In this document: piece after piece, positions 7,909-63,078 of the stretch
How positions within the stretch are numbered: the first letter of the stretch is position 1
Layout: each line of letters opens with the position of its first letter
IMG/VR virus record: IMGVR_UViG_3300030019_000003
Coordinates: 124,001 to 188,000 of that record
Strand: one strand, 5' to 3'
Length of the DNA: 64,000 nucleotides
Program-made: the position numbers and the translations under genes
Notes under the pieces: model-generated
The model's database searches: none
What the model was told of the DNA's origin: nothing
The model's input: only the letters and a program-made list of their open reading frames with translations

Positions 7909-8715
7909 ATGTTTACAAAATACGGTACTAATGTTACAGATTTCTTAAAGACGGCTAAAACCTTAAATGTCAATACTGACTTCATACACAAAATAGCTAA
8001 TTGTGATATAGAGGGTATTCCTCATTATGATGATGAGTTCTCTGCAGAAATTGTTTCAGAATGTTCTGAGAATCCATGGTACTATTTTAGAGAAGTAAAT
8101 AACTTTAATGTACCAACCTGTGAAGATGTTTTACATCTCGCACTTTTGATTAAGGGCTACGATACTCTTAGGTTAGGCAGAAGAGGTGTATTGAATACAA
8201 GTATACCAGCTTATATTCATTATGTGCTAAAATACACAGACATCATTAACAATATTGCTTTCGTAACTAACAATATGGATTTTGTTAAGAAACCGTTAGA
8301 GGTATTTCAAAATTTACAAGAAGCAGATATTCAAAATCATGTAACGATGTTAGAATGCCCTGGTTATGTTAGTAATGAATATACTGGTAGATGCTGCAGA
8401 ATAGGACAACTTGACTGGTTATTGGTAGGGGCTAAATACAGTATCGGTGTTGCCGATCTAACATTAGCTAATCCATTCACAGTTGCTACTATGCTTGAGA
8501 ATCTTATATCAGCTGTTAAAACTTCTGATGATAAAACACAATTTTCTAAAAGAGTTGTGCTCTATAAGGATATTGATCCGACAGAACACGATCTCTGCCT
8601 TAGTCAAGCATTAGATTCACTAGGTGGGTATTATGACAACATGGTTTTTGAACGTCATGATCTTTATAAGTTGTTAGAAAAAGAACCTACTGAAAAAATG
8701 CTATGCATTATTTAA
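7909..8715 (+). CDS. divergent paralog of the terminase large subunit N-terminal ATPase domain
   Basis: ECSENPWYYFREV versus ECSENPWYFFREV in the terminase; Walker A equivalent degenerate (LGRRGVLNTS versus QPRQTGKS). Confidence 0.7.
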   Translation: MFTKYGTNVTDFLKTAKTLNVNTDFIHKIANCDIEGIPHYDDEFSAEIVSECSENPWYYFREVNNFNVPTCEDVLHLALLIKGYDTLRLGRRGVLNTSIPAYIHYVLKYTDIINNIAFVTNNMDFVKKPLEVFQNLQEADIQNHVTMLECPGYVSNEYTGRCCRIGQLDWLLVGAKYSIGVADLTLANPFTVATMLENLISAVKTSDDKTQFSKRVVLYKDIDPTEHDLCLSQALDSLGGYYDNMVFERHDLYKLLEKEPTEKMLCII

Positions 8716-9633: not shown

Positions 9634-11019
9634 TTAAGCAGCTCTACGTTTATCTAATTCTATTTTTTCTAATAGAGTATCAATATTAAGAGTATCTAAA
9701 GAAGATGGGTCTAATATGTTATAAAGATACTGTATCTTATTTTTAGATTTAGCTACTAAACCAAGATGCTTAATAAGTTTCATTTCACTAGCAAGTCTTT
9801 CTATCTCTGTACGAATACGTATTTGATCTTCACGTTTACGTACTGCATCCATACCGCCAGCTTCTTCTACTTGGGTAGCTTTAACTGTTGTTAAGGTATT
9901 ATTAGGATTTAAACCATAGAATGATTTGTTAGAAGCCTCTGTCAAGAACCAGTATGGTAATAACCAAGCAACAACCATATCATCATGGCTATCAGAAGCA
10001 TGGTCTATTCTACCATTTTTAGATCGTAACCCTATAATCTGATTAATCAATCCGTTATCTCTTACAGTGTTACCTGTGTACTTAGTAGACGCCATAAAGG
10101 CTGCACCATAAAGTTTATCCCTTGCTTGTCTACCTGCCCCAGATGTTGCAAATCCAAACATGCTTCGATATTTGACATAGACGTTACTTTCTCTACGTAG
10201 CATACTAACATTAACAACTTCATTAAGATACTGTTTATTTACCATGCAGTCATTAACAACCCAGTTAAAGATACGTTTAAACGGATCAATAGTGTGCATT
10301 GGTAATATACGTAGTAAGTTATCAATGATCATAACACCACTAGATCTTCTTTCAGGAACTAGTATAGTATTATTGTATTTTATTAACAAGTCACCTATAA
10401 ACTCTGAGAATACGATAAGGTTAGTTTCATTATAGATACCTGTTGCGATAGTCTCACCTGATGATGCGTCTCTTATGATCATAGCAATATCATCTTTATT
10501 AACAGCATCAGAAGTATCTAGACCTACTATAAGTTTACGTGTTGGTAATCCAGCTTTAACTTCTTGTTCAGAAACATACCAGTTAGTGATATAACCACTT
10601 TTAGATAGTTCGGTATACTCAACTTTAGATTGTGATTTTTGAATATCCTCAATAACCTCTTTTGATAAAGGTGAAACATCTGAACCTTTAGCCCATAGGT
10701 TAAGGAAGTCTGCTCCGGCATTCTCACCTTTTGACATAGCCTCACTAATTTTCTCTTTTAACCACGCATCGGTATAACCTAATTGTCTATGGTTATATTC
10801 TAATAGTACTCTTAGTTCACCTGTAGGGCTATTTTTACATATAACAGATTTAAGAGCTTCAAGATCTTCAACATCAAAAAGTAACTCAGACCATCGCATA
10901 CTTTTAAGGTATAATTCTTCATAAGCAAACTTACCAGAATCAGTACTAATATACCCGGGGGTTGTTGTAAAAATATTGCCATAAGGAGCGTTAGCTGCTT
11001 TAGCAGAGTCTCTAGCCGC
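9634..11019 (-). CDS. terL: terminase large subunit, exon 2 (end of ATPase plus nuclease domain)
   Basis: Frame is open upstream of the called ORF: AARDSAKAANAPYGNIFTTTPG; GLDTSDAV and HDDMVVAW nuclease motifs. Confidence 0.9.
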   Translation of the reverse strand, partial: AARDSAKAANAPYGNIFTTTPGYISTDSGKFAYEELYLKSMRWSELLFDVEDLEALKSVICKNSPTGELRVLLEYNHRQLGYTDAWLKEKISEAMSKGENAGADFLNLWAKGSDVSPLSKEVIEDIQKSQSKVEYTELSKSGYITNWYVSEQEVKAGLPTRKLIVGLDTSDAVNKDDIAMIIRDASSGETIATGIYNETNLIVFSEFIGDLLIKYNNTILVPERRSSGVMIIDNLLRILPMHTIDPFKRIFNWVVNDCMVNKQYLNEVVNVSMLRRESNVYVKYRSMFGFATSGAGRQARDKLYGAAFMASTKYTGNTVRDNGLINQIIGLRSKNGRIDHASDSHDDMVVAWLLPYWFLTEASNKSFYGLNPNNTLTTVKATQVEEAGGMDAVRKREDQIRIRTEIERLASEMKLIKHLGLVAKSKNKIQYLYNILDPSSLDTLNIDTLLEKIELDKRRAA

Positions 11020-11458
11020 CTTGAATATTCAATGGGTTCGTTAGACCACATCCGCACCTCTATGTGCAGCTCACACTTTCATGTGACGATCAGGCTATCT
11101 CATCCTGAAAGGGCTTTCGCCGAATAGATCATATCTTTATCTTATATTTACTTAAGATAAACTTCGTTTCGATTTAAGGGATTTCATACCCGCCCACTTG
11201 GGCCCTACACCAATAACTGGTTGATCGTTGAGCACATCCCGTATATCACTTATGATACTTAGGGGCTTCGCTGCGTTGGTCGCCCAATCCTATTAAGTTT
11301 TTACTGTCCCGTTATGAATCATTACTCTAACGGTGTTATAGTATCTTTCGATCTATAAGTAGTATTAATAGGCTCTAAGGGGTTCTCCGCAATTAGAAGT
11401 TTTTGCTATATAGTGTCACCACTATATGGGGCACAGGCGGTTTTTAGGCCGCCATTTT
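11020..11458 (-). mobile_element. group I self-splicing intron (IA-like, 439 nt, no ORF) in terL
   Basis: 5' exon ends in U (GGU), intron ends in G; P element AAUUGCGGAGAACCC (11380-11394), Q-like CAACGCAGC, R GUGCUCAACGAUCA (11221-11235), S AAGAUAUGAUCU (11126-11137); removal restores frame MLPAQG|AARDSAK. Confidence 0.88.
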
Positions 11459-12199
11459 ACCCTGGGCTGGAAGCATAGCTGGGATGGTTATGTCGGCATA
11501 ATTAATATAAGCAATCTCATCTACTTGGTTCGTTGGGAATGTCATACCACGTCCAACATTATAAGCTGATTTAGGATTGTTCTGCGCCACTGATGTTATG
11601 TATTGTGTATTATTAGAATTAACCGTTATCTTCTCAGTGTTATTCGTATCTGTTTTAGATCTCAACTGTAGCATAGCTGGGAGCTCACTCATGATGTCTT
11701 TGATACGTTTAACGTTGTTGACTCGCAGAGTATCATCTTTGGTCAGCAAGTTGATGCTAGAGCGTACAGACCCTACTGAAAGTAACCACACCATAAGAAT
11801 ATCTGTTGATACTGATTTACCAGTTTGTCGAGGTTGTATTAGTAATGTAGTCACATGATTAAAATATAACCAGTATAATGAAATGTTACCACGATTAGCT
11901 CTTAACACAACACCTTTTTCAACACCTTGTGCTGGAACTCTAACTACTTCTCTAAAGAAGTACCAAGGATTCTCAGAACACTCATCTACTATAAGAATAA
12001 TCTCTTCAACTGAAAGATCATCTGAATGGGGGTCAACCCCTTGAAGAGCTGGATTATGTAATGCTAAACAAAAGGCACAGTTCTTTATACCCATCTTGTG
12101 CATTTTGACAGCATACATTTTAAAAGAGTCATTAGTTGTCTTTAAGTCGGCTATGGCTCCAGGATGTTTATTAACCCAGTCGTTTAAATATAATATCAT
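11459..12199 (-). CDS. terL: terminase large subunit, exon 1 (ATPase N-terminus)
   Basis: GGAGGA RBS before ATG 12199; ENPWYFFRE, Walker A PRQTGKS, Walker B QVDEIAY; spliced product 708 aa. Confidence 0.9.
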
Positions 12200-12285
12200 T
12201 ATTAATCCTCCCGACACTATATTTTTTTATATAAGTCATATAATTTTTTAATAGACGTATTTTGCCTGAGTGTAAGGAGAAAGAC

Positions 12286-13416
12286 ATGGCTAAAGAACTG
12301 TTTAATTATATAGCGATTGGCGACATACATTTTGGTCACACTAATACAACAACAGAACATATTATAGAAAGTTTTAACCAATGGTTTAAAACCTATATGA
12401 GCACAATACTAAAAACAAATGCTATCTTTTTAGAAGGAGATGTGTTTGATAAGCTATTAGGCAATAGTAGTACTGATTATATACTTGCTATGGAATGGCT
12501 ATATAACTTAGCCATATTTTGTTCTAAACATAAAATAAAGTTAAGAATATTAAGAGGTACTTTATCTCATGATTGGAATCAACTTAGACTAGTAGAAAAG
12601 ACATTTTTAAAACTTAAAACTGAACTTGATTTTAAATATATTCAAACTTTACATATAGAGCATATGTCTGATTTTAATATTGATGTACTGTATGTTCCTG
12701 ATGAGTATAAACATGACGCATCTGATACTTTTAAAGATGTTCAAGCCTTGCTGGTTGAAAAAGGTTTAACCAGTGTTGATATTGCTATTATGCATGGTAA
12801 CTTTAGTTATCAGTTACCTATTAAGACTGTCACTGCTCATGATGAAAATAGCTATCTTAACATTGTTAAGTATTATATTACTATTAATCATATTCATACT
12901 TCTAGTATTTTCGATAGAATCATAGCACCAGGTAGTTTTGATAGATTAGCTCATGGTGAAGAAGAAGATAAAGGTTGTGTTCACATTACATTATTTAAAG
13001 ACGGTAGTAAACGTTTTAGTTTTTTAAAAAATACCTTAAGTAAAATCTATAAAACAATTAACTGTTTTGATCTTTCACTCGATGATATCTTTAGTAAGAT
13101 AGATAAGGGAGTTAGAAAGTTACCTTTGAATTCTTTTATAAGGCTTAAGATAAATTCAGATACAAGACTTAGTAAGAACGTAGAAGACTTTACTAAAAAG
13201 TATGAGTTTTATACTTTTAAAATTGAATCTGAAAAAGATAAGGGCTTAACGAATGGTAGTAATATTACTGATATAGAAATACCGTTAGAAAGTTTTCATA
13301 TTACCCCTGAGAATATAGAAGAATTACTACTAGAGGAGTTACGTAAACAAACATTATCAGAAATTGAACTTGATACGGCAATAGAGGAGTTAAGGCGAGC
13401 TATTGAAAAACTTTAA
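12286..13416 (+). CDS. sbcD: SbcD/Mre11-like metallophosphoesterase nuclease
   Basis: GDIHFG, GDVFD, GTLSHD, MHG, NHIH, PGS motifs; AAGGAG RBS favours ATG 12286. Confidence 0.88.
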   Translation: MAKELFNYIAIGDIHFGHTNTTTEHIIESFNQWFKTYMSTILKTNAIFLEGDVFDKLLGNSSTDYILAMEWLYNLAIFCSKHKIKLRILRGTLSHDWNQLRLVEKTFLKLKTELDFKYIQTLHIEHMSDFNIDVLYVPDEYKHDASDTFKDVQALLVEKGLTSVDIAIMHGNFSYQLPIKTVTAHDENSYLNIVKYYITINHIHTSSIFDRIIAPGSFDRLAHGEEEDKGCVHITLFKDGSKRFSFLKNTLSKIYKTINCFDLSLDDIFSKIDKGVRKLPLNSFIRLKINSDTRLSKNVEDFTKKYEFYTFKIESEKDKGLTNGSNITDIEIPLESFHITPENIEELLLEELRKQTLSEIELDTAIEELRRAIEKL

Positions 13417-21078: not shown

Positions 21079-21096
21079 TTCAGTGTTTTCTAACGA

Positions 21097-21105
21097 TATA
21101 TTATT
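21097..21105 (+). promoter_or_regulatory. putative early phage promoter
   Basis: CTAACGATATATTATT. Confidence 0.55.
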
Positions 21106-21314
21106 TATGTATGCAAACAAATAATAAAAGGGGTAACCGTGAATGATACTTTAAAAATAGATGGTAAAAATAATGATCCTGGTAACCTAAGATGGGTTCC
21201 CAGAGATGAGGCTGTTCTTAATGAGATGTTGGTAACTGAAAGACGTAAAGGTAATAAGATTTTCCATAAGATTTGGGATAAGATTACTAACGCACTAAAA
21301 AAGAAAGGAAACAA

Positions 21315-23579
21315 ATGACCGATGGAGTAACATCATCAGGTATACCTTATAATACACTCTTTGAAGATTTTCCAAGAGTTTTAGAAGTGGATCCTGATTT
21401 AGAGGTTAGGGAGGAGTTACTAAGCTTCCATGCTATGAATGGTAGTGTTGCTGAAAACTCATCAAGTCGTATGTTTATGTACTCTGCGCATGTTGCCCAG
21501 ATGCTAGCTATTATACATGGCGAAACGTCTATATGGCAATCCGGATTAGAGTCGCAATTCTCTAAAAATACTTTCTCGTGTAAAGCTAAAAATGATTGTA
21601 CCGTTCTAAGAGTTGTTTCGCGTTATAATGGTAATAGCAGCGATTATGCCAAGGGTCTTACAGAAGTAGTAGTCTTTGTTGTTGATAATGAAACAGGTGA
21701 GATAGATTTCATTAAGGTACCCTATTACCATACGTTACATCAGTATTTTGGTTTTAAATACATGTGGAATAAGGGTATCGTTAATGATCTTACAAAAGGG
21801 CTAAGACTTAAAAAAGGTACGGTGCTAGCTGACTCACCAACAGTCGGACCTAACGATACGTATAACTATGGTGTTAATGCTAACATAGCCCTTATGAGGC
21901 TACCAGAGACCGCAGAGGATGGTGTTATCATATCAGAGTCACTTTCTAATAAGTTAGTTTATAAGATCTTTGAAAGAAGAGTTATCAATTGTGGCGCAGA
22001 AAAGATTCCTCTTAATATCTATGGTGATGAAAATGAGTATAAAGCATTTCCAGAGATAGGTCAAAAGGTTAATACAGATAGTGTACTTATGGCGGTTCGC
22101 ACCTATGATGAAGCATTAGCTCCAGCATTATTTACCAAGAAAGCATTGATGGAATATGATCCACAATTCGATGAACCTTTCTATGTAAAAGGTCCTGGAA
22201 AAGATGAAGTTATTAACGGATTTGAGGTAACCTCAGGAACTGTGGTCGATGTAATTTCCTATTTTAACCCTAAATTCAAGAAGAGTATGTTCACAGGTGT
22301 AGCAGATGATGCTACAAAATATATTAATGGTTATAAGAAATACCATGAAGATATTATTGGTGCCTATGAGGATATTAAGAAAGAATACAGATCAGTCTAC
22401 GGTGATAATAATCTTAAACTTTCTGAAAGATTACACCGACAGATTATTAACAGTTATGCTATTGCAAATCCGGATGGTAACAAGATAGGATACTGTTTTA
22501 GAAAAGACAATCTTGATATTATACGTATTGAAATTGTAGTCGAATATACCGTCAGAGCAAAGGTGGGTTCAAAAATTTCTGATATGGCTGGATCCAAAGG
22601 TGTTATAGTACAAGTTAAACCAGACCATGAGATGCCAGTGGACATCTATGGTGAAAAAGCCCAAATTTTAATGGACCCGAGTGCTGTGGTTTCACGTATG
22701 AATATGGGAAGACTATATGGTGTCTATTTTAATGCCTCATCAAGGCACACCAAGTCATTAATTACTAACTGGTTGTATGCAGAAAAAACAAATTTCCCTA
22801 CTAGTAATTTAGACGCAATTCCTATTACTAAAGATATCGTTCTTAAACCTTTAAATCAGTATTCGGATGCTGTAATAAATACTGCATTTGATATTGCTGT
22901 AGGATTTACTGCTGTGTTTGGTACAGAACAATTTGAAGGTTATAGGGCGATAACAGATAGAGCCTCTAAAGAAAATATTCTTAAAGATATTGTTACTAAA
23001 GAGTTATTTTTCTATTACAGAGCTGGTAGCAAACGTAAACGTTATCAGGTTGCGTATGGTATTGAAAGTGCTATTTATAAACCTATACGCGATAGAGTTA
23101 AGTTTATTATGTATGGTAAAGAGTATATTAGTAAAAAACCTATAAGAATAGCACCACAGTATACTATCTTGTTAGGTAAAACTGCTGATAACTTCTTATC
23201 TACAGCATCTGCTAAGACTAATCACTTTGGTCTAGGTGTTGGTATCCCTAGTCATCAGAGACATCGTAATCCGTTTAAAGATACGGCAGTTAAAAATGAA
23301 TCTGAAACTGAAGGACGCTTGTTCGTATCTTTTGCGCCACCACAGTTTGTTGCTGAAATAAACGATAGAGCTAATAAAGATATCAACCGTTATATCTACG
23401 GTAAACTATTAAGAACTCCTAAGCCTACTAATGTAGGGCAGCTTATTGATAGGTCTGTTATACCTTATGGTAATAATTCAGCATTACAAGTAATAGAGTC
23501 GGTATTTAACTGTGCCGGAGTTGGTATTTCTTATGTAAGAGACAGCGCTGTTATACATGAGAATAAAGAAGGTGTATAA
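21315..23579 (+). CDS. non-virion RNA polymerase beta subunit, C-terminal part (phiKZ gp71-73-like), uninterrupted
   Basis: GVNANIA, EDGVIISES, GSKISDMAGSKGVI, DPSAVVSRMNMGRLY beta motifs. Confidence 0.9.
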   Translation: MTDGVTSSGIPYNTLFEDFPRVLEVDPDLEVREELLSFHAMNGSVAENSSSRMFMYSAHVAQMLAIIHGETSIWQSGLESQFSKNTFSCKAKNDCTVLRVVSRYNGNSSDYAKGLTEVVVFVVDNETGEIDFIKVPYYHTLHQYFGFKYMWNKGIVNDLTKGLRLKKGTVLADSPTVGPNDTYNYGVNANIALMRLPETAEDGVIISESLSNKLVYKIFERRVINCGAEKIPLNIYGDENEYKAFPEIGQKVNTDSVLMAVRTYDEALAPALFTKKALMEYDPQFDEPFYVKGPGKDEVINGFEVTSGTVVDVISYFNPKFKKSMFTGVADDATKYINGYKKYHEDIIGAYEDIKKEYRSVYGDNNLKLSERLHRQIINSYAIANPDGNKIGYCFRKDNLDIIRIEIVVEYTVRAKVGSKISDMAGSKGVIVQVKPDHEMPVDIYGEKAQILMDPSAVVSRMNMGRLYGVYFNASSRHTKSLITNWLYAEKTNFPTSNLDAIPITKDIVLKPLNQYSDAVINTAFDIAVGFTAVFGTEQFEGYRAITDRASKENILKDIVTKELFFYYRAGSKRKRYQVAYGIESAIYKPIRDRVKFIMYGKEYISKKPIRIAPQYTILLGKTADNFLSTASAKTNHFGLGVGIPSHQRHRNPFKDTAVKNESETEGRLFVSFAPPQFVAEINDRANKDINRYIYGKLLRTPKPTNVGQLIDRSVIPYGNNSALQVIESVFNCAGVGISYVRDSAVIHENKEGV

Positions 23580-23616: not shown

Positions 23617-24204
23617 ATGAATTTAACACGACGAATATCCTATGGCGAGATACTCGAATGTATCCAGTCTTCAAAATATAAAGAGTCTTGTGATATTACC
23701 ATAGACAAAATCCCAGAGAGTTTTTTAGACTTAACAGGACGTACACATAATAATCATTTGTATCTACGTTATCTTGGTGTTAACAGTAACTATTATCCTC
23801 TATGGCTTATAGAGTGTCAGCGTTGCTTTAAACTCTCTATTATAGTGTATGTTGACGATCGTGTAACAGAGACAGGTAAGTGTAGTAAGTGTCGTTCTAG
23901 TAAGTTCTATAATTCTACAGATAAGTTTTATAAAATCTGGAATCAGCTCTATCGTAAAGTTACTGATCCTAAACATAGGTTTTATGCTAATTCGGGTGGA
24001 AATGGTTATACCATAGATCCTAGTTGGAGTGACTATCTTGTTTTTAAAAAAGATATGTTTAAAAGTTATAGCAAAGGACTAGTACTAACTGTTATAGGTA
24101 GGTCTAAGCATTTTTCTAAGAAGACAGCAAAATGGACAGAACCTGTTTATAACATTAATGCTAAGAATGCTAAAGAAATTAGAGGGAGGGGTACTAAAGT
24201 ATGA
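23617..24204 (+). CDS. degenerate HNH-like homing endonuclease
   Basis: Two CxxC pairs; YANSGGNGYTIDPSWSDYLVFKKDM resembles YGGRGI.VC..W..F..F..DM; the LDRID..Y...NCRW core is replaced by LTVIGRSKHFSKKTAKW. Confidence 0.6.
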   Translation: MNLTRRISYGEILECIQSSKYKESCDITIDKIPESFLDLTGRTHNNHLYLRYLGVNSNYYPLWLIECQRCFKLSIIVYVDDRVTETGKCSKCRSSKFYNSTDKFYKIWNQLYRKVTDPKHRFYANSGGNGYTIDPSWSDYLVFKKDMFKSYSKGLVLTVIGRSKHFSKKTAKWTEPVYNINAKNAKEIRGRGTKV

Positions 24205-25105: not shown

Positions 25106-25582
25106 ATGCGTGAATTTGTAAATCTGTCACCTTACCTTATCACTATTAATGATAAAGTATATGACCCGGCGCAAACACTAACAGTTGCAGAGGTATTGAC
25201 TATTCTTGATGATAACAATATCAACTATGCTAAAAAGAATGCTGATGAAAAAGTCTTCATAGTTGATAATGAAGTCTATTGCCGTATACAAGCCTTTTCA
25301 TTAGCAACTAGGCATGTTAAGGTTCTACCAGCGTCTATTTTTATTAATGTACCTAATGCTGATAAATACAAAATAACACCCGTAGCAGTTATTAACATTA
25401 CCGATAATGATGTGAAAACTGAAACAGGTGCTCTTTGTAAAGCAAAGATAACTAAAACAGAGGCGCATAATCTTATTCTTAATCATACGGATAAGACCTA
25501 TTGGGGTCATATTAGCGAGGCTGAATATGAGGCTATGCCAGTTAAGCGTAAACGATTCTACATTACTATATCAAACCTTTAG
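25106..25582 (+). CDS. hypothetical protein (158 aa)
   Basis: AAGGAG RBS. Confidence 0.75.
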   Translation: MREFVNLSPYLITINDKVYDPAQTLTVAEVLTILDDNNINYAKKNADEKVFIVDNEVYCRIQAFSLATRHVKVLPASIFINVPNADKYKITPVAVINITDNDVKTETGALCKAKITKTEAHNLILNHTDKTYWGHISEAEYEAMPVKRKRFYITISNL

Positions 25583-25591
25583 GAAAAAACA

Positions 25592-49899: not shown

Positions 49900-50691
49900 T
49901 TATAGCATCTCTTTTTTGTATGTTTTTTTAAGTTCTTCAATACCACCCCAACTGTTGTGCTTAAAATGTTGCCGTCCGTCATATTCAATAAGCAAGTTAT
50001 AATCTGGTAAATAAAAATCGTAACTATACCTGAATGGAACTATCTTGTATTGTCTAACAAATCTTATATTTTTAAAAGATAGCAATATATCTAGCTTATC
50101 CTCTCCTTTAGAATTTGTTTTACACCACGGGCAGCCAGCGCCCTGTAAATGCGAACTTGCATTTTGCTCAAAATCACCATGTTCTAAACATGTTATAATG
50201 ATCTTATTGCAATCTCCGGTATAGATTATGTTATCGTAATAATATCTTTCACCGTGTACATTTTTAGCGTCTGCTATAAATTGATCTTTAGTTTTTAATT
50301 TTAACTTACTTACATATTCCTCGCCACATTTTCTACACCCGTGACCGCTCATATGTAACTTCGGGCTTTGCATAAAATAACCGTGCTTGAAACATCTTAT
50401 TTTAACAGGGGTTACTCTATTTATAAAGTCTATTTCGGCATATCCGTATCTATCGCCGTGGGTTATTTTAGCTCTTTCTAGAAAAGATTCTTTCGTGACC
50501 TCTGTTTTCCCACCACACGTAAAACAACCTCTTCCTTGTATATGCGCGTACGCCTTTTGCTCAAAAGCGCCGTGCATGGGACATATGATTATAACTTTAT
50601 CATGTGCCCTAGTGTATATTGTTTTACTGTAGTCATATTTATTATTATGTATAAAATTAGCTCTTTTTATAAATAACTTTGTTCTATCCAA
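49900..50691 (-). CDS. free-standing endonuclease (three Zn-binding C..HG.F.Q...H..G.GC..C repeats plus PD-(D/E)xK Vsr-like domain), frameshifted near C-terminus
   Basis: YDFYLPDYNLLIEYDGRQHF; AAAGGA RBS before TTG 50691; expected tail KRDAIKN...LLRISY lies in another frame. Confidence 0.8.
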   Translation of the reverse strand: MDRTKLFIKRANFIHNNKYDYSKTIYTRAHDKVIIICPMHGAFEQKAYAHIQGRGCFTCGGKTEVTKESFLERAKITHGDRYGYAEIDFINRVTPVKIRCFKHGYFMQSPKLHMSGHGCRKCGEEYVSKLKLKTKDQFIADAKNVHGERYYYDNIIYTGDCNKIIITCLEHGDFEQNASSHLQGAGCPWCKTNSKGEDKLDILLSFKNIRFVRQYKIVPFRYSYDFYLPDYNLLIEYDGRQHFKHNSWGGIEELKKTYKKEML

Positions 50692-50725
50692 GTGAATTCC
50701 TTTCGCGTACACAGCTGTGTGTATG

Positions 50726-60523: not shown

Positions 60524-62656
60524 GTGATGATATTACAGAGATTTATAAAGAATCCCAGCACATTTAACATAGAACTACTATTAGTTTTGACTCCTGAAAA
60601 CTCTAGGATGTTGAAAGAAGTAAAGAAACCTACTATATTTGAACCTAATACGCAAGTGTTTGATAAAGAAGGATTATTTTCTACAGAAATATTTGGTCCA
60701 GTTGGATCTACTATGCGTAAAGTTTTACCGGGCTATATTGATTTAGGGGTATCTGTTATTCACCCTGAGATATATGATTCTATATCACAACTTGGATCAA
60801 TTTACGCTAGCATCATGTCAGGTGAACAAAGAGTAAGATACAATAAGATTACACGTAACTTTGATCCTGTCACAGATGAGGAAGAAGGACAAACAGGTTA
60901 TAAGTATTTTCTAGATCATTACTTCGCAGGTAAGATTTCTTTTATGGAGAATGATAGTAGTAAGCGACAGTATAACTTAAAAATAGTTGAAAACGGAATG
61001 GATGTTACCAAAACGATTACTAAAATGATCGTGTTGCCAGCAGGACTTAGAGATTATACCATTAACAAGTCTGGAAGGGGTGAAGAAGACGAAGTTAATA
61101 CTCTCTATAGAAAAGTACTCGCCATTACGAGTATGGTTAAAAACACCACTCTAGATGATGATAACTTAGCACTACTTGATCCGATGCGTTTTAGATTACA
61201 GATGGCGTTTAACGAGATCTATAATCACTTTGCCGATCTTATGGATGGTAAGAATAAATTCTTACAAAGTAAATTTTCAAAACGTGCTATCATGTTTGGT
61301 ACACGTAATGTTATTACATCAACACCTAACTATATTACAGATTTAAAATCTCCGACCAAAACAGGTGTGAACCATACGATTGTTGGTATTTATCAATTTA
61401 TAAAAAGTATAACACCTATTGCTGCTAATAAGGTTATTAACATTTTTATTAGTCGATTTATGAACCCAACAACTAACACGGCAATATTAGTTAACCCCAA
61501 AACAATGAAAACTGAAATTGTTGATATTCCTGTTAAAAAGAGAGATGACTGGATATCGTTAGACGGATTAAATAATCTGTTTAATAAATTTGCACAAGAT
61601 AGTTTTAAAAGTTTACCTGTTAAGATTAATGGTTATTATCTTATGCTAATTTACGATGACGGTAAAAATGTTAAGTACTATTTTAACACCGATGATATTG
61701 ATGAAAAAACAGATAGAAAGTATATCAGGCCTATTACCTATATTGAGCTTGTTTACATGGCGATATACGATGTTAAAGATAAATACCCAGCATTCTTAAC
61801 ACGTTATCCTGTCGCTGCTCTGGGCGGTATCTATCCAAGTTATCAATACGTTAAAACAACTATAAACGGTAGAACTGTTAACTTTAGTATGGACAACATT
61901 TCTAAAACAGTTTATGAGTATCCTAAACTAGGTGATGAGTACGTTAACTCTATGTCAATTTCACAATACCATCTAAAGCGAGCTGGCGCAGATTATGATG
62001 GCGATATGATGAGCAGTAATGGGCTATTAACAGCAGAGTCTATAGCTGAAGTAAAAAGGATTCTTAATACAAAAGAATACTATATTACTCCAGACGGTGA
62101 AGCTACCTATACTATAGCTACAGATACTTTAGAATATGTTATGGCTCATTTATCAGATACTAGTCTATTATCTAAGGTATATCAATTTCAAGAGCTAACA
62201 GATTTCATACCTGTTGATAAACTTTGCACCGCTTTAACAAAAATTTATAATACTTCTTTTGGTCATAATGAAACTGTAGAAACATTTAAAAAATGGTTAG
62301 AGACACGAATATACCGAGAAGGTGATGAAGTTGATGTTGTTGCTAATGGTAAAGGTGATATATACGGATATGGTAGATACCGAGAATTTAATAAAGGTAC
62401 AGAGATTTACTCACCTCTTTCTAAAACTAAGAGATATGGTTTTATTTCAGATCTAGCCAGTGTTGTTAAAGGAACTGGTACTAAGATACTAAACCATATA
62501 TTAACCGAAGTAGATACTAAGAAAATAGATGTGATGCTTTTAGCTAGAACTGAAAGTCTTATACCTTACTATGAGAAATTTGGATTTAAAGTTGTTGATG
62601 CTAAAGGTGTCAATGTAAAGATAACTAAACCTTTGATGGTGAGGTACGCACAGTAA
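60524..62656 (+). CDS. virion RNA polymerase beta-prime catalytic subunit (phiKZ gp180-like) fused to a C-terminal GNAT-like domain
   Basis: GLFSTEIFG, LPAGLRD, GTRNVIT, RYP and catalytic ADYDGD (61988-62005); extra ~165 aa with KGTGTKIL and YYEKFGF. Confidence 0.9.
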   Translation: MMILQRFIKNPSTFNIELLLVLTPENSRMLKEVKKPTIFEPNTQVFDKEGLFSTEIFGPVGSTMRKVLPGYIDLGVSVIHPEIYDSISQLGSIYASIMSGEQRVRYNKITRNFDPVTDEEEGQTGYKYFLDHYFAGKISFMENDSSKRQYNLKIVENGMDVTKTITKMIVLPAGLRDYTINKSGRGEEDEVNTLYRKVLAITSMVKNTTLDDDNLALLDPMRFRLQMAFNEIYNHFADLMDGKNKFLQSKFSKRAIMFGTRNVITSTPNYITDLKSPTKTGVNHTIVGIYQFIKSITPIAANKVINIFISRFMNPTTNTAILVNPKTMKTEIVDIPVKKRDDWISLDGLNNLFNKFAQDSFKSLPVKINGYYLMLIYDDGKNVKYYFNTDDIDEKTDRKYIRPITYIELVYMAIYDVKDKYPAFLTRYPVAALGGIYPSYQYVKTTINGRTVNFSMDNISKTVYEYPKLGDEYVNSMSISQYHLKRAGADYDGDMMSSNGLLTAESIAEVKRILNTKEYYITPDGEATYTIATDTLEYVMAHLSDTSLLSKVYQFQELTDFIPVDKLCTALTKIYNTSFGHNETVETFKKWLETRIYREGDEVDVVANGKGDIYGYGRYREFNKGTEIYSPLSKTKRYGFISDLASVVKGTGTKILNHILTEVDTKKIDVMLLARTESLIPYYEKFGFKVVDAKGVNVKITKPLMVRYAQ

Positions 62657-63078
62657 TGGCAACGTTAGTAGAAATTGACAAACTTGATGTTAAATTTCTA
62701 AACAACCTTGATAGTGAACGTTTTGATAGGAGATATGCCTGTAACGATAGCGGACAAGTCTATTTGATTAAACAAGATGGTGGGAAGACATGGGTTGCGC
62801 AACCCATGTCACCCTTTGTCACTCGCGATGGTTATGTAGAATATGTTTTAACGTCTATAACTAAAAGAAAGATACATATACAGGCGCAACGTATCGTTGC
62901 TGGGTTATATTGTAAAAAGAAACCTGGTTGTAATTATGTTAATCATAAGAATGGTATTCGTTACGATAACCACTATAAGAATTTAGAGTGGGTTACCCAA
63001 TCTGATAATATTAAACATTCTTATAGAGTTTTAAGAACACGCTGGAATAGTAAAGCCAGTAAGTTTGAATTGTATTAA
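62656..63078 (+). CDS. HNH homing endonuclease (HNH_3/NUMOD4-type)
   Basis: QAQRIVA, VNHKNGIRYDNHYKNLEWVTQSDNIKH; TAATG coupling to RNAP stop. Confidence 0.85.
   Translation: MATLVEIDKLDVKFLNNLDSERFDRRYACNDSGQVYLIKQDGGKTWVAQPMSPFVTRDGYVEYVLTSITKRKIHIQAQRIVAGLYCKKKPGCNYVNHKNGIRYDNHYKNLEWVTQSDNIKHSYRVLRTRWNSKASKFELY

What the first reader, a model, noticed from the sequence alone, without database searches (positions are those of the whole stretch)
11020..11458. ORF-less group I intron in terminase with a covaried P7 helix
Seen: complete P/Q/R/S core, U at the 5' splice site, terminal G, in-frame ligation giving 708 aa. P7 reads GAUCA/UGAUC instead of the usual GACUA/UAGUC, a double compensatory change beside the guanosine-binding site. 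Unspliced RNA stops four codons into the intron. No endonuclease is inside or adjacent. Inference: mobility would require a trans-acting endonuclease (collaborative homing), for which the window holds three candidates; splicing could gate packaging.
Basis: partly seen in the sequence, partly recalled or inferred. Interest (0 to 1): 0.6.

Follow-up and report, generated by a model that had tools for sequence, protein, structure and literature searches.

The report
Self-splicing intron in jumbo-phage terminase gene
The large terminase gene of an uncultured peat jumbo phage is split by a 439-base group I intron with no gene inside it; the intron is real and precisely placed, but it is an ordinary member of a well-known kind, and its "covaried" P7 helix is a common variant among phage introns.

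Summary
On the minus strand, window 11458->11020 is a 439-nt ORF-less group I intron (Rfam RF00028, 52.2 bits against a cut-off of 50). It splits terL into exon 1 (12199->11459) and exon 2 (11019->9634).

- **Junction.** It is exact to the nucleotide. In 71 of 73 metagenomic relatives and 3 IMG/VR relatives, the two exon translations meet on adjacent codons (G|AARD).
- **Structure.** An intron at the same site in another phage (L008) keeps every helix through at least 13 double compensatory changes.
- **P7.** It reads GAUCA/UGAUC, while two sister introns in the same genome read GACUA/UAGUC. The variant is not unusual: at least 111 IMG/VR contigs carry it, against at least 102 canonical. The TerL intron of Shewanella phage KASIA, which RT-PCR showed to be spliced, carries it too.
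- **Endonucleases.** The window holds three endonuclease-like genes, none next to terL. A relative (L290) has an intron at the same site with a 422-aa HNH endonuclease in P8, so ordinary homing followed by loss of the endonuclease explains the ORF-less state.

Trans ("collaborative") homing and a packaging gate remain untested. No RNA data exist. Verdict: new member of a known kind, low to moderate interest.

The parts
11459..12199 (-). terL exon 1 (247 aa from ATG 12199; an upstream in-frame GTG at 12217 is less likely). It holds the invariant RQTGKS motif (Walker A-like) and an invariant D-E pair (Walker B-like).
   Evidence: phrog_2 terminase large subunit, E 1.8e-42. tblastn gives 46-54% identity to TerL of Erwinia Ea35-70, Ralstonia RP12 and Burkholderia FLC9. 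Invariant columns are listed in alignment A2. The start is supported by stops upstream of the equivalent Met in L009 and L010.
11020..11458 (-). Group I intron, 439 nt, ORF-less
   Evidence: RF00028 52.2 bits against a cut-off of 50. Exact junction in relatives. No ORF of 40 aa or more inside. MFE z -3.42.
9634..11019 (-). terL exon 2 (461 aa plus stop), starting AARDSAKAAN and containing the TTTPG motif
   Evidence: Open frame P0001. tblastn gives 36-41% identity to jumbo-phage TerL over 89-99% of its length.
11459..11462 (-). P1, exon strand GGGU; U11459 is the 5' splice-site U
   Evidence: Pairs with GCCC at 11432-11429, with U.G at the cleavage site. The same GGGU/GCCC pairing is seen in L290.
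11429..11432 (-). Internal guide sequence GCCC (P1, intron strand)
11436..11453 (-). P1 extension hairpin (GGCGG/CCGCC). Its loop holds the in-frame UAA stop at 11446-11444.
   Evidence: L008 has GUAGC/GCUAC at the same place, three double compensatory changes. The stop is shown.
11408..11427 (-). P2 hairpin, 8 bp with a GUGA loop
   Evidence: Three double compensatory changes against L008. Recovered by MFE folding.
11396..11402 (-). P3 5' strand (AAACUUC); pairs with 11165-11159
   Evidence: Two double compensatory changes against L008
11243..11391 (-). P4-P6 domain with the P (AAUUGCGG) and Q (CGCAGC) elements and a roughly 100-nt P5 extension
   Evidence: Rfam alignment. 78.8% identity to the KASIA TerL intron over intron nt 55-198. 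P5a and P6b pair in both the window intron and L008.
11222..11226 (-). P7 5' strand GAUCA (R element); G11226 belongs to the presumed guanosine-binding G-C pair
   Evidence: The same sequence is found in L008, L290 and KASIA.
11178..11221 (-). P7.1 and P7.2 helices between P7 and P3' (subgroup IA-type feature)
   Evidence: One double compensatory change in each of P7.1 and P7.2b against L008. The conserved GGGCCCAAGUGGG motif is shared with sister introns.
11159..11165 (-). P3 3' strand (GAAGUUU)
11139..11158 (-). P8 hairpin (AUCUUA/UAAGAU) with a short loop. This is where relatives carry an endonuclease ORF or a long AT-rich remnant.
   Evidence: L008 has about 90 extra nt in this loop. L290, L016 and L018 carry 372-422 aa HNH ORFs here.
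11127..11138 (-). J8/7 (AAAGAUA, 11138-11132) plus P7 3' strand UGAUC (11131-11127): the S element
   Evidence: This site is conserved in L008, L290 and KASIA. Rfam's own alignment placed the S element at a second, unconserved UGAUC; I rejected that placement.
11035..11121 (-). P9, P9.1, P9.1a and P9.2 hairpins. The P9.2 loop holds a conserved UAACGA (11043-11038).
   Evidence: P9 GGC/GCC against GAC/GUC, and P9.1 with two double changes against L008. The UAACGA loop is also present in the two sister introns, KASIA, L008 and L290.
11020..11020 (-). Terminal G (omega G), 3' splice site
49900..50712 (-). P0003, a free-standing nuclease gene (270 aa; zinc-ribbon repeats plus a short Vsr/DUF559-like C-terminus). 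Candidate trans-acting endonuclease only; no link to the intron is shown.
   Evidence: phrog_559 E 1.9e-50, phrog_9084 homing endonuclease E 5.9e-13. Weak Pfam DUF723/DUF559 matches. Homologues lie directly upstream of terL in L009, L010, L286 and L309.
62656..63078 (+). P0002, a short HNH_3 endonuclease gene (140 aa) directly after an RNAP beta gene. Candidate only.
   Evidence: PF13392 25.2 bits; phrog_59 E 6.5e-21. The phrog_59 match runs on past its stop through 2 TAA codons. It shares only the catalytic core with the L290 intron endonuclease.
23617..24204 (+). P0004, a 195-aa endonuclease-like gene directly after another RNAP beta gene. Candidate only.
   Evidence: phrog_374 E 8.9e-14, phrog_8790, phrog_3377. 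No Pfam match.

Best explanation
Window 11458->11020 (minus strand) is a self-splicing group I intron of the phage IA type, with P7.1/P7.2 helices, and it carries no endonuclease gene. It interrupts the large terminase gene of a 252-kb peat jumbo phage that also encodes a homologue of the phiKZ nuclear-shell protein.

How it works (inferred from the anatomy):
1. The pre-mRNA folds so that the exon end GGGU pairs with the guide sequence GCCC (P1, with U11459.G at the cleavage site).
2. Free guanosine docks at the G-C pair of P7 (G11226-C11127) and attacks after U11459.
3. The terminal G11020 then takes that pocket, and the exons are joined between GGU (Gly) and GCG (Ala).
4. The spliced message encodes a 708-aa TerL. 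Unspliced RNA yields only a 251-aa stub (247 residues plus KMAA), so TerL production needs splicing.

The GAUCA/UGAUC P7 is a common lineage variant that keeps the helix and the G-binding pair.

Origin (inferred): the intron descends from an endonuclease-carrying intron that homed into this conserved site, and it later lost the ORF from P8. It now persists as an immobile or only passively mobile passenger whose presence destroys the endonuclease target site.
For: Shown by computation:
- RF00028 full-length match above the cut-off.
- The junction is exact to the nucleotide in 3 IMG/VR and 71 metagenomic intronless relatives, with G|AARD conserved.
- An intron at the same site in L008 keeps P1ext, P2, P3, P7.1, P7.2b, P9 and P9.1 through at least 13 double compensatory changes.
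- MFE folding recovers most hairpins, z -3.42.
- P7 strands covary across IMG/VR: matched combinations in at least 111 and at least 102 contigs, mixed combinations in 10 and 36.
- The intron-bearing allele occurs unchanged in several independent samples: L004, L005 and L281, plus contigs of runs X5-X8 that cross both borders.
- L290 has an intron at the same site with the same P7 and a 422-aa HNH_3/NUMOD endonuclease in P8.
- L008 has a roughly 90-nt AT-rich P8 extension, consistent with a decaying ORF.

From the literature: the KASIA TerL intron, which shares the P3-P6 domain (78.8% identity) and the same P7, is removed from mRNA in vivo (PMC8541194). Terminases are known intron targets (PMC3984707, PMC11878797).
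Against: - No RNA evidence: none of the 24 runs that hold the locus is an RNA run.
- The Rfam score is only 2 bits above the cut-off, the gathering-mode scan of the whole window missed the intron, and Rfam's own alignment misplaces the S element.
- Self-splicing without protein help is not shown. Some phage introns splice in vivo but not in vitro (PMC11878797).
- Loss of an endonuclease gene is inferred from relatives, not traced on a tree.
- The L290 intron's 3' border has a 1-nt ambiguity: the last intron base is A by the protein-based junction.
Confidence: 0.9

Rival explanations
1. Collaborative (trans) homing is active. One of the window's free-standing nucleases cuts intronless terL alleles of co-infecting relatives at or near G|AARD, and repair from this genome copies the ORF-less intron in. 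The intron also makes the phage's own terL immune.
For: - Three endonuclease-like genes lie in the window.
- P0003 belongs to phrog_559. Members of that family are encoded inside TerL introns in four Bastillevirinae phages (PMC11878797, Table 2).
- phrog_559 homologues also lie directly upstream of, and divergent from, terL in four intronless relatives: L009, L010, L286 and L309.
- P0002 is in phrog_59, the same family as the endonuclease inside the same-site intron of L290.
- The concept has two documented precedents (PMC3984707).
Against: - No nuclease gene is adjacent to terL here; the neighbour is SbcD-like. P0003 lies 38 kb away and P0002 51 kb away.
- P0002 (140 aa) lacks the roughly 300-aa DNA-binding part of the related intron endonucleases and looks truncated.
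- The nuclease domain of P0003 is short at its C-terminus.
- P0002 and P0004 each sit right after an RNAP beta gene, the usual position for nucleases that target that neighbouring gene.
- phrog_59 and phrog_559 are large families, so family membership does not predict the target.
- No cleavage data exist.
Confidence: 0.12
2. The intron is kept by selection as a protective plug. By splitting the target site, it shields terL from homing endonucleases of competing phages. The two sister introns would do the same for the RNAP beta'-like and DNA polymerase genes.
For: - All three introns in the genome are ORF-less and sit in classic endonuclease target genes.
- Relatives carry endonuclease-bearing introns at the same terL site (L290) and the same RNAP site (L016).
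- A homing endonuclease acts as a weapon between co-infecting chimalliviruses (PMC11620839).
- No intronless allele of this phage was seen in four peat runs.
Against: - Immunity of an occupied site follows automatically from any intron insertion and does not show selection.
- The same pattern is expected from neutral persistence after endonuclease loss.
- Contigs drop rare variants, so failing to see an intronless allele is weak evidence.
Confidence: 0.2
3. Splicing is a regulated gate: the rate of intron removal, sensitive to GTP or to growth state, times terminase production and hence packaging.
For: Unspliced RNA cannot give TerL because of the stop four codons into the intron. A "molecular on-switch" idea has been proposed for phage introns in rNDP reductase, polymerase and terminase genes (PMC11878797).
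Against: Nothing in the sequence points to regulation. About 70 relatives do without the intron at this site. In the SIOphi terminase gene only spliced transcripts were seen throughout infection (PMC11878797).
Confidence: 0.08
4. The insert is not a working intron: terL is a broken gene, or the insert is an assembly artefact.
For: No RNA evidence exists, and the Rfam score is near threshold.
Against: - The same sequence is found in independent samples and runs.
- The genome is complete with terminal repeats.
- Both exons are intact long open frames with conserved motifs.
- Helices are kept by compensatory change in the same-site intron of L008.
- No other homologue of either terL exon longer than 46 aa appears in the 8.8 kb held around terL in L004/L005. 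The rest of the genome was not searched for a second terL.
Confidence: 0.02

Closest known systems
TerL group I intron of Shewanella phage vB_SspS_KASIA (MZ568826; PMC8541194)
   Same: A group I intron in a terminase large-subunit gene. It is 78.8% identical over the P3-P6 domain (intron nt 55-198). It has the same GAUCA/UGAUC P7 and the same UAACGA terminal loop. RT-PCR and sequencing showed that it is absent from the mRNA.
   Different: The KASIA intron carries an HNH endonuclease ORF downstream of P7'. Its TerL is unrelated by tblastn, so the insertion site differs. The host phage is a 91-kb siphovirus, not a jumbo phage.
Same-site metagenomic introns L008 (IMG/VR 3300008469_000033) and L290 (ERZ772940 NODE-307)
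   Same: Both are inserted at the identical G|AARD codon boundary of homologous TerL genes (53-55% identity in exon 1), with the same P7 variant and the same helix plan.
   Different: L008 is 534 nt, with a roughly 90-nt AT-rich P8 loop. L290 is 1606 nt, with a 422-aa HNH_3/NUMOD endonuclease in P8 and no P2. The window intron is the most compact of the three.
Phage T4-type subgroup IA2 introns (td, nrdB, sunY) and Bastillevirinae/Twort-like introns (PMC3984707, PMC11878797)
   Same: [quoted passage not shown] They have extra P7.1/P7.2 helices, an in-frame stop soon after the 5' splice site, and optional endonuclease ORFs in peripheral loops.
   Different: No detectable sequence similarity beyond the core. 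The subgroup was assigned here by helix layout only, not by a classifier.
Collaborative homing pairs: the ORF-less nrdB intron plus MobE in Aeromonas phage Aeh1, and the psbA intron plus F-CphI in cyanophages (PMC3984707, refs 72 and 76)
   Same: [quoted passage not shown]
   Different: In both known pairs the endonuclease gene lies next to the intron-bearing gene (from my own knowledge of refs 72 and 76, not checked here), and cleavage at the intron insertion site was shown. Here no nuclease gene is adjacent and no cleavage is known.
PhiPA3 gp210 intron in a chimallivirus RNA polymerase gene (PMC11620839)
   Same: A group I intron in an essential gene of a nucleus-forming jumbo phage. Here the genome has a phiKZ gp54 homologue.
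   Different: The PhiPA3 intron is in an RpoB-like subunit and carries an active HNH endonuclease. The window intron is in terL and is ORF-less.

Membership tests
Group I intron (Rfam RF00028) | Covariance-model match at or above the curated gathering score | tested here: met
   52.2 bits against 50, full model 1-253, E 3.7e-12. Found again in the genome scan.
Group I intron (Rfam RF00028) | P1 helix formed by the 5' exon end and an internal guide sequence, with a U.G wobble at the cleavage site | tested here: met
   GGGU (11462-11459) pairs with GCCC (11432-11429), with U11459.G11432 at the cleavage site. The same pairing is seen in L290.
Group I intron (Rfam RF00028) | Conserved core P3-P8 with the P/Q/R/S elements and a P3/P7 pseudoknot holding a G-C guanosine-binding pair | tested here: met
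   All strands were located and pair. P3 shows 2 double compensatory changes against L008. P7 strands covary across IMG/VR. That the G-C pair is the guanosine-binding site rests on established knowledge of the Tetrahymena G264-C311 pair, recalled and not tested here.
Group I intron (Rfam RF00028) | Terminal G, and exon ligation that restores the host gene | tested here: met
   G11020 ends the intron. The exons abut on adjacent codons in 74 intronless relatives.
Group I intron (Rfam RF00028) | Guanosine-dependent splicing of the RNA | not testable with these tools
   No RNA run holds the locus, and read laying had only DNA contigs.
Subgroup IA (phage type) | Extra helices P7.1 and P7.2 between P7 and the 3' strand of P3 | tested here: met
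   Hairpins at 11221-11209 and 11202-11178. Each shows one double compensatory change against L008 and is recovered by MFE folding. No subgroup classifier was run.
Mobile group I intron (intron plus homing endonuclease) | An endonuclease ORF inside a peripheral loop | tested here: not met
   No ORF of 40 aa or more lies inside the intron, and the P8 loop is only 8 nt. Relatives L290, L016, L018 and KASIA do carry one.
Collaborative (trans) homing pair | A free-standing endonuclease gene adjacent to the intron-bearing gene | tested here: not met
   The neighbours are an SbcD-like gene (phrog_100) and small ORFs with no endonuclease match. The three nuclease-like genes lie 12, 38 and 51 kb away.
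Collaborative (trans) homing pair | [quoted passage not shown] | not testable with these tools
   This needs a cleavage assay. Only family-level leads exist: phrog_559 genes next to terL in relatives, and phrog_59 shared with the L290 intron endonuclease.
Terminase large subunit | Homology of both halves to TerL, with ATPase motifs | tested here: met
   phrog_2 E 1.8e-42 for exon 1. tblastn of both exons hits annotated jumbo-phage TerL genes. RQTGKS and D-E are invariant in A2. Pfam and PDB sequence searches found nothing.

The most novel reading that the evidence does not exclude
The terL intron and a free-standing nuclease of the same genome form a split homing pair in a nucleus-forming jumbo phage. 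The likeliest partner is P0003, a phrog_559-type gene whose relatives sit directly beside terL in intronless phages. The nuclease would cut intronless terL of co-infecting relatives near G|AARD. The ORF-less intron would protect the phage's own gene and be copied into the rival. That would make three "empty" introns plus scattered nucleases a competition system rather than decayed parasites.
Probability: 0.1. Interest if true: 0.55.

Novelty: new member of a known kind. Interest (0 to 1): 0.28.

Why it matters
For annotation, terL of this phage must be written as a join of two exons; otherwise it looks like two fragments of 257 and 421 aa.

For biology, the case adds little that is new. Group I introns in terminase genes, ORF-less introns and the GAUCA/UGAUC P7 are all documented or common.

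The wider picture has modest value. This is a complete peat jumbo phage with a nuclear-shell homologue and three ORF-less introns, in the terL, RNAP beta'-like and DNA polymerase genes. Relatives show every stage at the same terL site: an empty site, an intron with an endonuclease, an intron with a remnant, and a compact intron. That series is a clean natural example of the homing cycle. It also gives a testable link between terL and a family of free-standing Vsr-like nucleases.

Tried and rejected
**Searches that found nothing**
- Rfam gathering-mode scan of the whole window: no hit. The hit appeared once the region was scanned alone.
- Megablast of the locus against GenBank phages: no match.
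- Pfam on either exon: nothing. PHROGs on exon 2 alone: nothing at E<=0.001.
- PDB profile search with exon-1 alignment A2: nothing, so the insertion site could not be mapped onto a solved terminase.
- RNA evidence: no RNA run holds the locus. Contigs of four DNA runs show no form lacking the intron, which is weak evidence because contigs drop rare variants.

**Readings I rejected**
- Rfam's alignment puts the S element and P7 3' strand at the second UGAUC (11092-11088). That site is absent from L008, L290 and KASIA, whereas AAGAUA-UGAUC at 11137-11127 is conserved.
- I first concluded that only one endonuclease gene was present. That rested on six-frame scans with Pfam HNH, HNH_3, GIY-YIG, LAGLIDADG_3, NUMOD4 and Endonuclease_7, plus phrog_59.
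- I considered whether the RNAP intron sits at the PhiPA3 gp210 site. It does not: gp210 is in an RpoB-like subunit after two Asp residues, while the intron here follows the beta'-type NADFDGD motif.

**Left out**
- Host genes of other phrog_559-bearing introns (L028, L133, L158, L220) were looked at but not identified.
- All searches and alignments were done exon by exon, by reference.
- No structure or complex prediction was run; none would bear on the claim.
Full report
**What is there.** The gene lies on the minus strand. Reading downward, an open frame from ATG 12199 runs to 11459 and continues four codons (KMAA) to a UAA at 11446-11444. A second open frame of 461 aa starts at 11019 and ends at 9634. 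PHROGs calls the first part a terminase large subunit (phrog_2, E 1.8e-42). By tblastn, both parts match the TerL of phiKZ-like jumbo phages such as Erwinia Ea35-70, Ralstonia RP12 and Burkholderia FLC9. Exon 1 is 46-54% identical and exon 2 is 36-41% identical, and in Ea35-70 the two matches lie collinear in the genome. The 439 nt between them (11458->11020) match Rfam's group I intron model end to end: 52.2 bits against a gathering score of 50, E 3.7e-12. The gathering-mode scan of the whole 64-kb window missed the intron, which is a filter effect; the whole-genome scan finds it again.

**Source.** The window is bases 124001-188000 of a 252,159-bp IMG/VR virus record with direct terminal repeats, rated 100% complete. 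DNA runs that hold the locus are almost all peat metagenomes. The genome encodes a homologue of the phiKZ nuclear-shell protein gp54 (E 8.2e-9, in a 639-aa open frame). That gene lies just upstream of an RNA polymerase subunit gene, as in phiKZ. The phage is therefore probably nucleus-forming.

**The junction is exact.**
- In the intronless relatives L007, L010 and L015, residue 253 of the exon-1 query (counted from the upstream in-frame GTG at 12217; residue 247 from ATG 12199) ends at nucleotide N, and residue 1 of exon 2 starts at N+1 in the same frame.
- A metagenome scan seeded with an exon-1 alignment (A2) returned 80 loci, 73 of which hold both exons. Of these, 71 have a 0-nt gap at the junction, one is the same phage (439 nt), and one (L290) has a 1606-nt insert.
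- The protein context is conserved as ...LPAxxxxG | AARD.... It lies 19 residues after an invariant D-E pair and shortly before a TTTPG motif.
A stop codon lies just upstream of the equivalent Met in L009 and L010.

**Secondary structure.** L008, an IMG/VR phage whose TerL exon 1 is 53% identical, has a 534-nt intron at the very same site. I aligned the two introns and located each helix strand in both. All 17 helices pair in the window intron. In L008 all pair except P6b, whose 5' strand was not located as typed.

| Helix | Double compensatory changes against L008 |
|---|---|
| P1 extension | 3 |
| P2 | 3 |
| P3 | 2 |
| P7.1 | 1 |
| P7.2b | 1 |
| P9 | 1 |
| P9.1 | 2 |

P5a and P9.2 differ in sequence and length but still pair. 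Counting those, the total is at least 13 pairs changed on both sides without loss of pairing. Thermodynamic folding alone recovers P1ext, P2, P5a, P6b, P7.1, P7.2, P8, P9, P9.1 and P9.1a, with z = -3.42. P1 is GGGU/GCCC with U11459.G11432 at the cleavage site. The two helices between P7 and P3' are the layout of subgroup IA phage introns; that is an inference from layout, because no classifier was run.

**The P7 helix.** The 5' strand is GAUCA (11226-11222).
- *Where the 3' strand lies.* It is the UGAUC at 11131-11127, preceded by the canonical J8/7 sequence AAGAUA. Rfam's alignment instead used a second UGAUC at 11092-11088. That copy is absent from L008, L290 and KASIA, which all keep AAGAUA/AUGAUA-UGAUC followed by a GNRA-capped P9.
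- *What changed.* Compared with the textbook GACUA/UAGUC, pairs 3 and 4 of the helix are exchanged (C-G, U-A becomes U-A, C-G). The G-C pair and the next A-U pair are unchanged. That this G-C pair corresponds to the guanosine-binding pair of the Tetrahymena ribozyme is established knowledge that I recalled and did not test.
- *Contrast within the genome.* The two other group I introns of the same genome carry the canonical form.
The two mixed combinations occurred in only 10 and 36 contigs. These counts are not corrected for relatedness.
- *Conclusion.* The pairing is real and under constraint, but the variant is as common as the canonical form. It also occurs in the TerL intron of Shewanella phage KASIA, which RT-PCR and sequencing showed to be absent from the mRNA (PMC8541194). 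The P7 observation is correct but unremarkable.

**Persistence of the allele.** Contigs from other IMG/VR and JGI samples (L004, L005, L281) carry the identical intron. In four further peat runs, contigs cross the 3' border (X5, X7, X8) and the 5' border (X5, X6, X8) with no differences, and no joint skips the intron. No RNA run holds the locus, so splicing itself is inferred.

**Endonucleases.** The intron has no ORF of 40 aa or more. The divergent neighbour (12262-13416) is SbcD-like (phrog_100), a general recombination nuclease; the other neighbours give no endonuclease match.

My first pass used six-frame Pfam scans and found only one HNH_3 gene and a remnant. Scanning about 30 further window ORFs of 74-309 aa against PHROGs corrected this.
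- **P0002** (62656-63078, 140 aa; phrog_59, HNH_3). It lies directly after an RNAP beta gene. It looks truncated: the family match runs on through two stops, and it aligns only to the catalytic core of related intron endonucleases.
- **P0004** (23617-24204, 195 aa; phrog_374/3377/8790). It lies directly after another RNAP beta gene.
- **P0003** (49900-50712, 270 aa; phrog_559, E 1.9e-50). It has zinc-ribbon repeats and a short Vsr/DUF559-like end.

**How the intron got there.** L290, whose TerL exon 1 is 55% identical, has at the same codon boundary a 1606-nt group I intron (Rfam 35 bits on its 5' part). It has the same GGGU/GCCC P1 and the same GAUCA/UGAUC P7. It also carries a 422-aa HNH_3/NUMOD1/NUMOD4 endonuclease (phrog_59, E 1.2e-40) inserted in P8. 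That endonuclease is homologous to those inside sister introns L016 and L018 (E 1e-30 to 1e-38). L008 has about 90 extra AT-rich bases in the P8 loop, and the window intron has an 8-nt loop.

Together with about 70 empty sites, this is the series expected from the homing cycle: invasion, loss of the endonuclease, and compaction. That is my preferred account of the ORF-less state. The order of events is inferred, not shown on a tree.

**What keeps the trans-homing idea alive.**
- phrog_559, the family of P0003, is the family found inside TerL introns of four Bastillevirinae phages (PMC11878797, Table 2).
- In four intronless relatives of this phage, a phrog_559 gene lies directly upstream of, and divergent from, terL: L010, L286, and the long forms in L009 (904-aa frame) and L309 (704-aa frame).
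- Free-standing homing endonucleases usually sit beside their target gene (general knowledge; PMC3984707 for the concept), so terL is a plausible target of that family.

In the window's own genome, however, P0003 is 38 kb from terL and its nuclease domain is short. No cleavage data exist. I rate active trans homing at about 0.12.

**Packaging gate.** Splicing is needed for TerL, since unspliced RNA gives a 251-aa stub. Nothing indicates regulation, and most relatives lack the intron. A GTP-sensing "switch" has been proposed for phage introns (PMC11878797), but it is not supported by anything here.

**Comparison with what is known.** Group I introns in terminase genes are documented:
- KASIA (PMC8541194), which also cites Shewanella phages 1/4 and 1/40.
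- Bastillevirinae, 5 of 52 terL genes (PMC11878797).
- The review PMC3984707 lists terminases among typical targets.
- From memory and unchecked: Lactobacillus phage LL-H.

ORF-less introns and collaborative homing are reviewed in PMC3984707. Introns in nucleus-forming phages are known from PhiPA3 (PMC11620839). Other terL relatives fetched here carry group I introns at other positions (L027, L036, L074, L107, L146). The window intron meets every sequence-level criterion for a group I intron. It fails the criteria for a mobile intron and for the known collaborative arrangement.

**Verdict.** A correct observation of an ordinary element: a new member of a known kind. Interest 0.28.

Noticed in passing
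Outside the window: genome C1 about 232917-233415 (+), locus L001; and about 25163-25584 (-), locus L003: There are two more ORF-less group I introns in the same genome (RF00028 56.6 and 51.4 bits). One sits immediately after the NADFDGD catalytic motif of an RNAP beta'-like subunit (phrog_2987). The other is in a DNA polymerase gene (phrog_3011; exons of 466 and 120 aa). Both have the canonical GACUA/UAGUC P7. [quoted passage not shown]
   Followed up: partly
Outside the window: genome C1 230418-231260 (+): A homologue of the phiKZ nuclear-shell protein gp54 (E 8.2e-9, 23% identity, 639-aa frame) lies just upstream of the intron-bearing RNAP gene. The phage is therefore probably nucleus-forming, and intron splicing would be uncoupled from translation.
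   Followed up: partly
window 7909-8715 (+), especially 7972-8097: This 268-aa ORF starts with a stretch 46% identical to TerL exon-1 residues 46-91, and gives weak phrog_2 / phrog_32359 terminase matches (E 0.005 and 0.002). It may be a partial TerL N-terminal paralogue 1 kb downstream of terL on the other strand.
   Followed up: no
window 21094-21318 (+) and 23617-24204 (+), flanking the RNAP beta gene 21315-23579: A 74-codon stop-to-stop frame with a sub-threshold HNH_3 match (14.7 bits) lies just before this RNAP beta gene, and the endonuclease-like P0004 lies just after it. The gene looks flanked by endonuclease genes or their remnants.
   Followed up: partly
window 11088-11092 (-): A second UGAUC lies inside the P9 region and could also pair with the P7 5' strand. 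Rfam's alignment chose it. It is not conserved in related introns, so it is probably chance, or at most a misfolding trap.
   Followed up: yes
window 11038-11043 (-); also L008, L290, L023 (KASIA), L001, L003: The loop of the last hairpin before the 3' splice site reads UAACGA in all six introns compared, although their stems differ. It is probably a tertiary-contact loop; the partner was not identified.
   Followed up: no
L290:7058-8641 (+) and L290:6840-6855: The TerL of L290 also carries a roughly 127-aa Hint-type mini-intein in exon 2, at the conserved HDDM/AWLL motif (Pfam Hint_2 30.6 bits). In addition, the protein-based junction of its intron leaves A, not G, as the last intron base. 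A G is shared at both borders, and the 1-nt ambiguity is unexplained.
   Followed up: partly
L009:989-3700 (-), L309:11-2122 (-), L010:3208-3927 (-), L286:1-531 (-), L075:2574-3809 (-): phrog_559 nuclease genes, up to 904 codons long with many zinc-ribbon repeats, lie directly upstream of terL in four intronless relatives. In L075 one lies between two ORFs that look, by eye, like halves of an RNAP beta gene, next to a group I core with the GAUCA/UGAUC P7 (L075:2174-2273); it is therefore probably intron-encoded, though the host gene was not confirmed by a family search.
   Followed up: partly
L027, L036, L074, L107, L146: More distant terL relatives (35-42% identity in exon 1) carry group I intron cores at other positions of the gene, for example just after the Walker A region. 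terL is evidently a repeated target in this phage group.
   Followed up: no
Read-laying run X8, record 23, on window 11164-11208: A 478-nt contig matches only the P7.2 motif, with 3 differences, and then diverges. Its loose ends match the sister RNAP intron of the same genome. This is a cross-match between paralogous introns, not a variant of the terL intron.
   Followed up: yes
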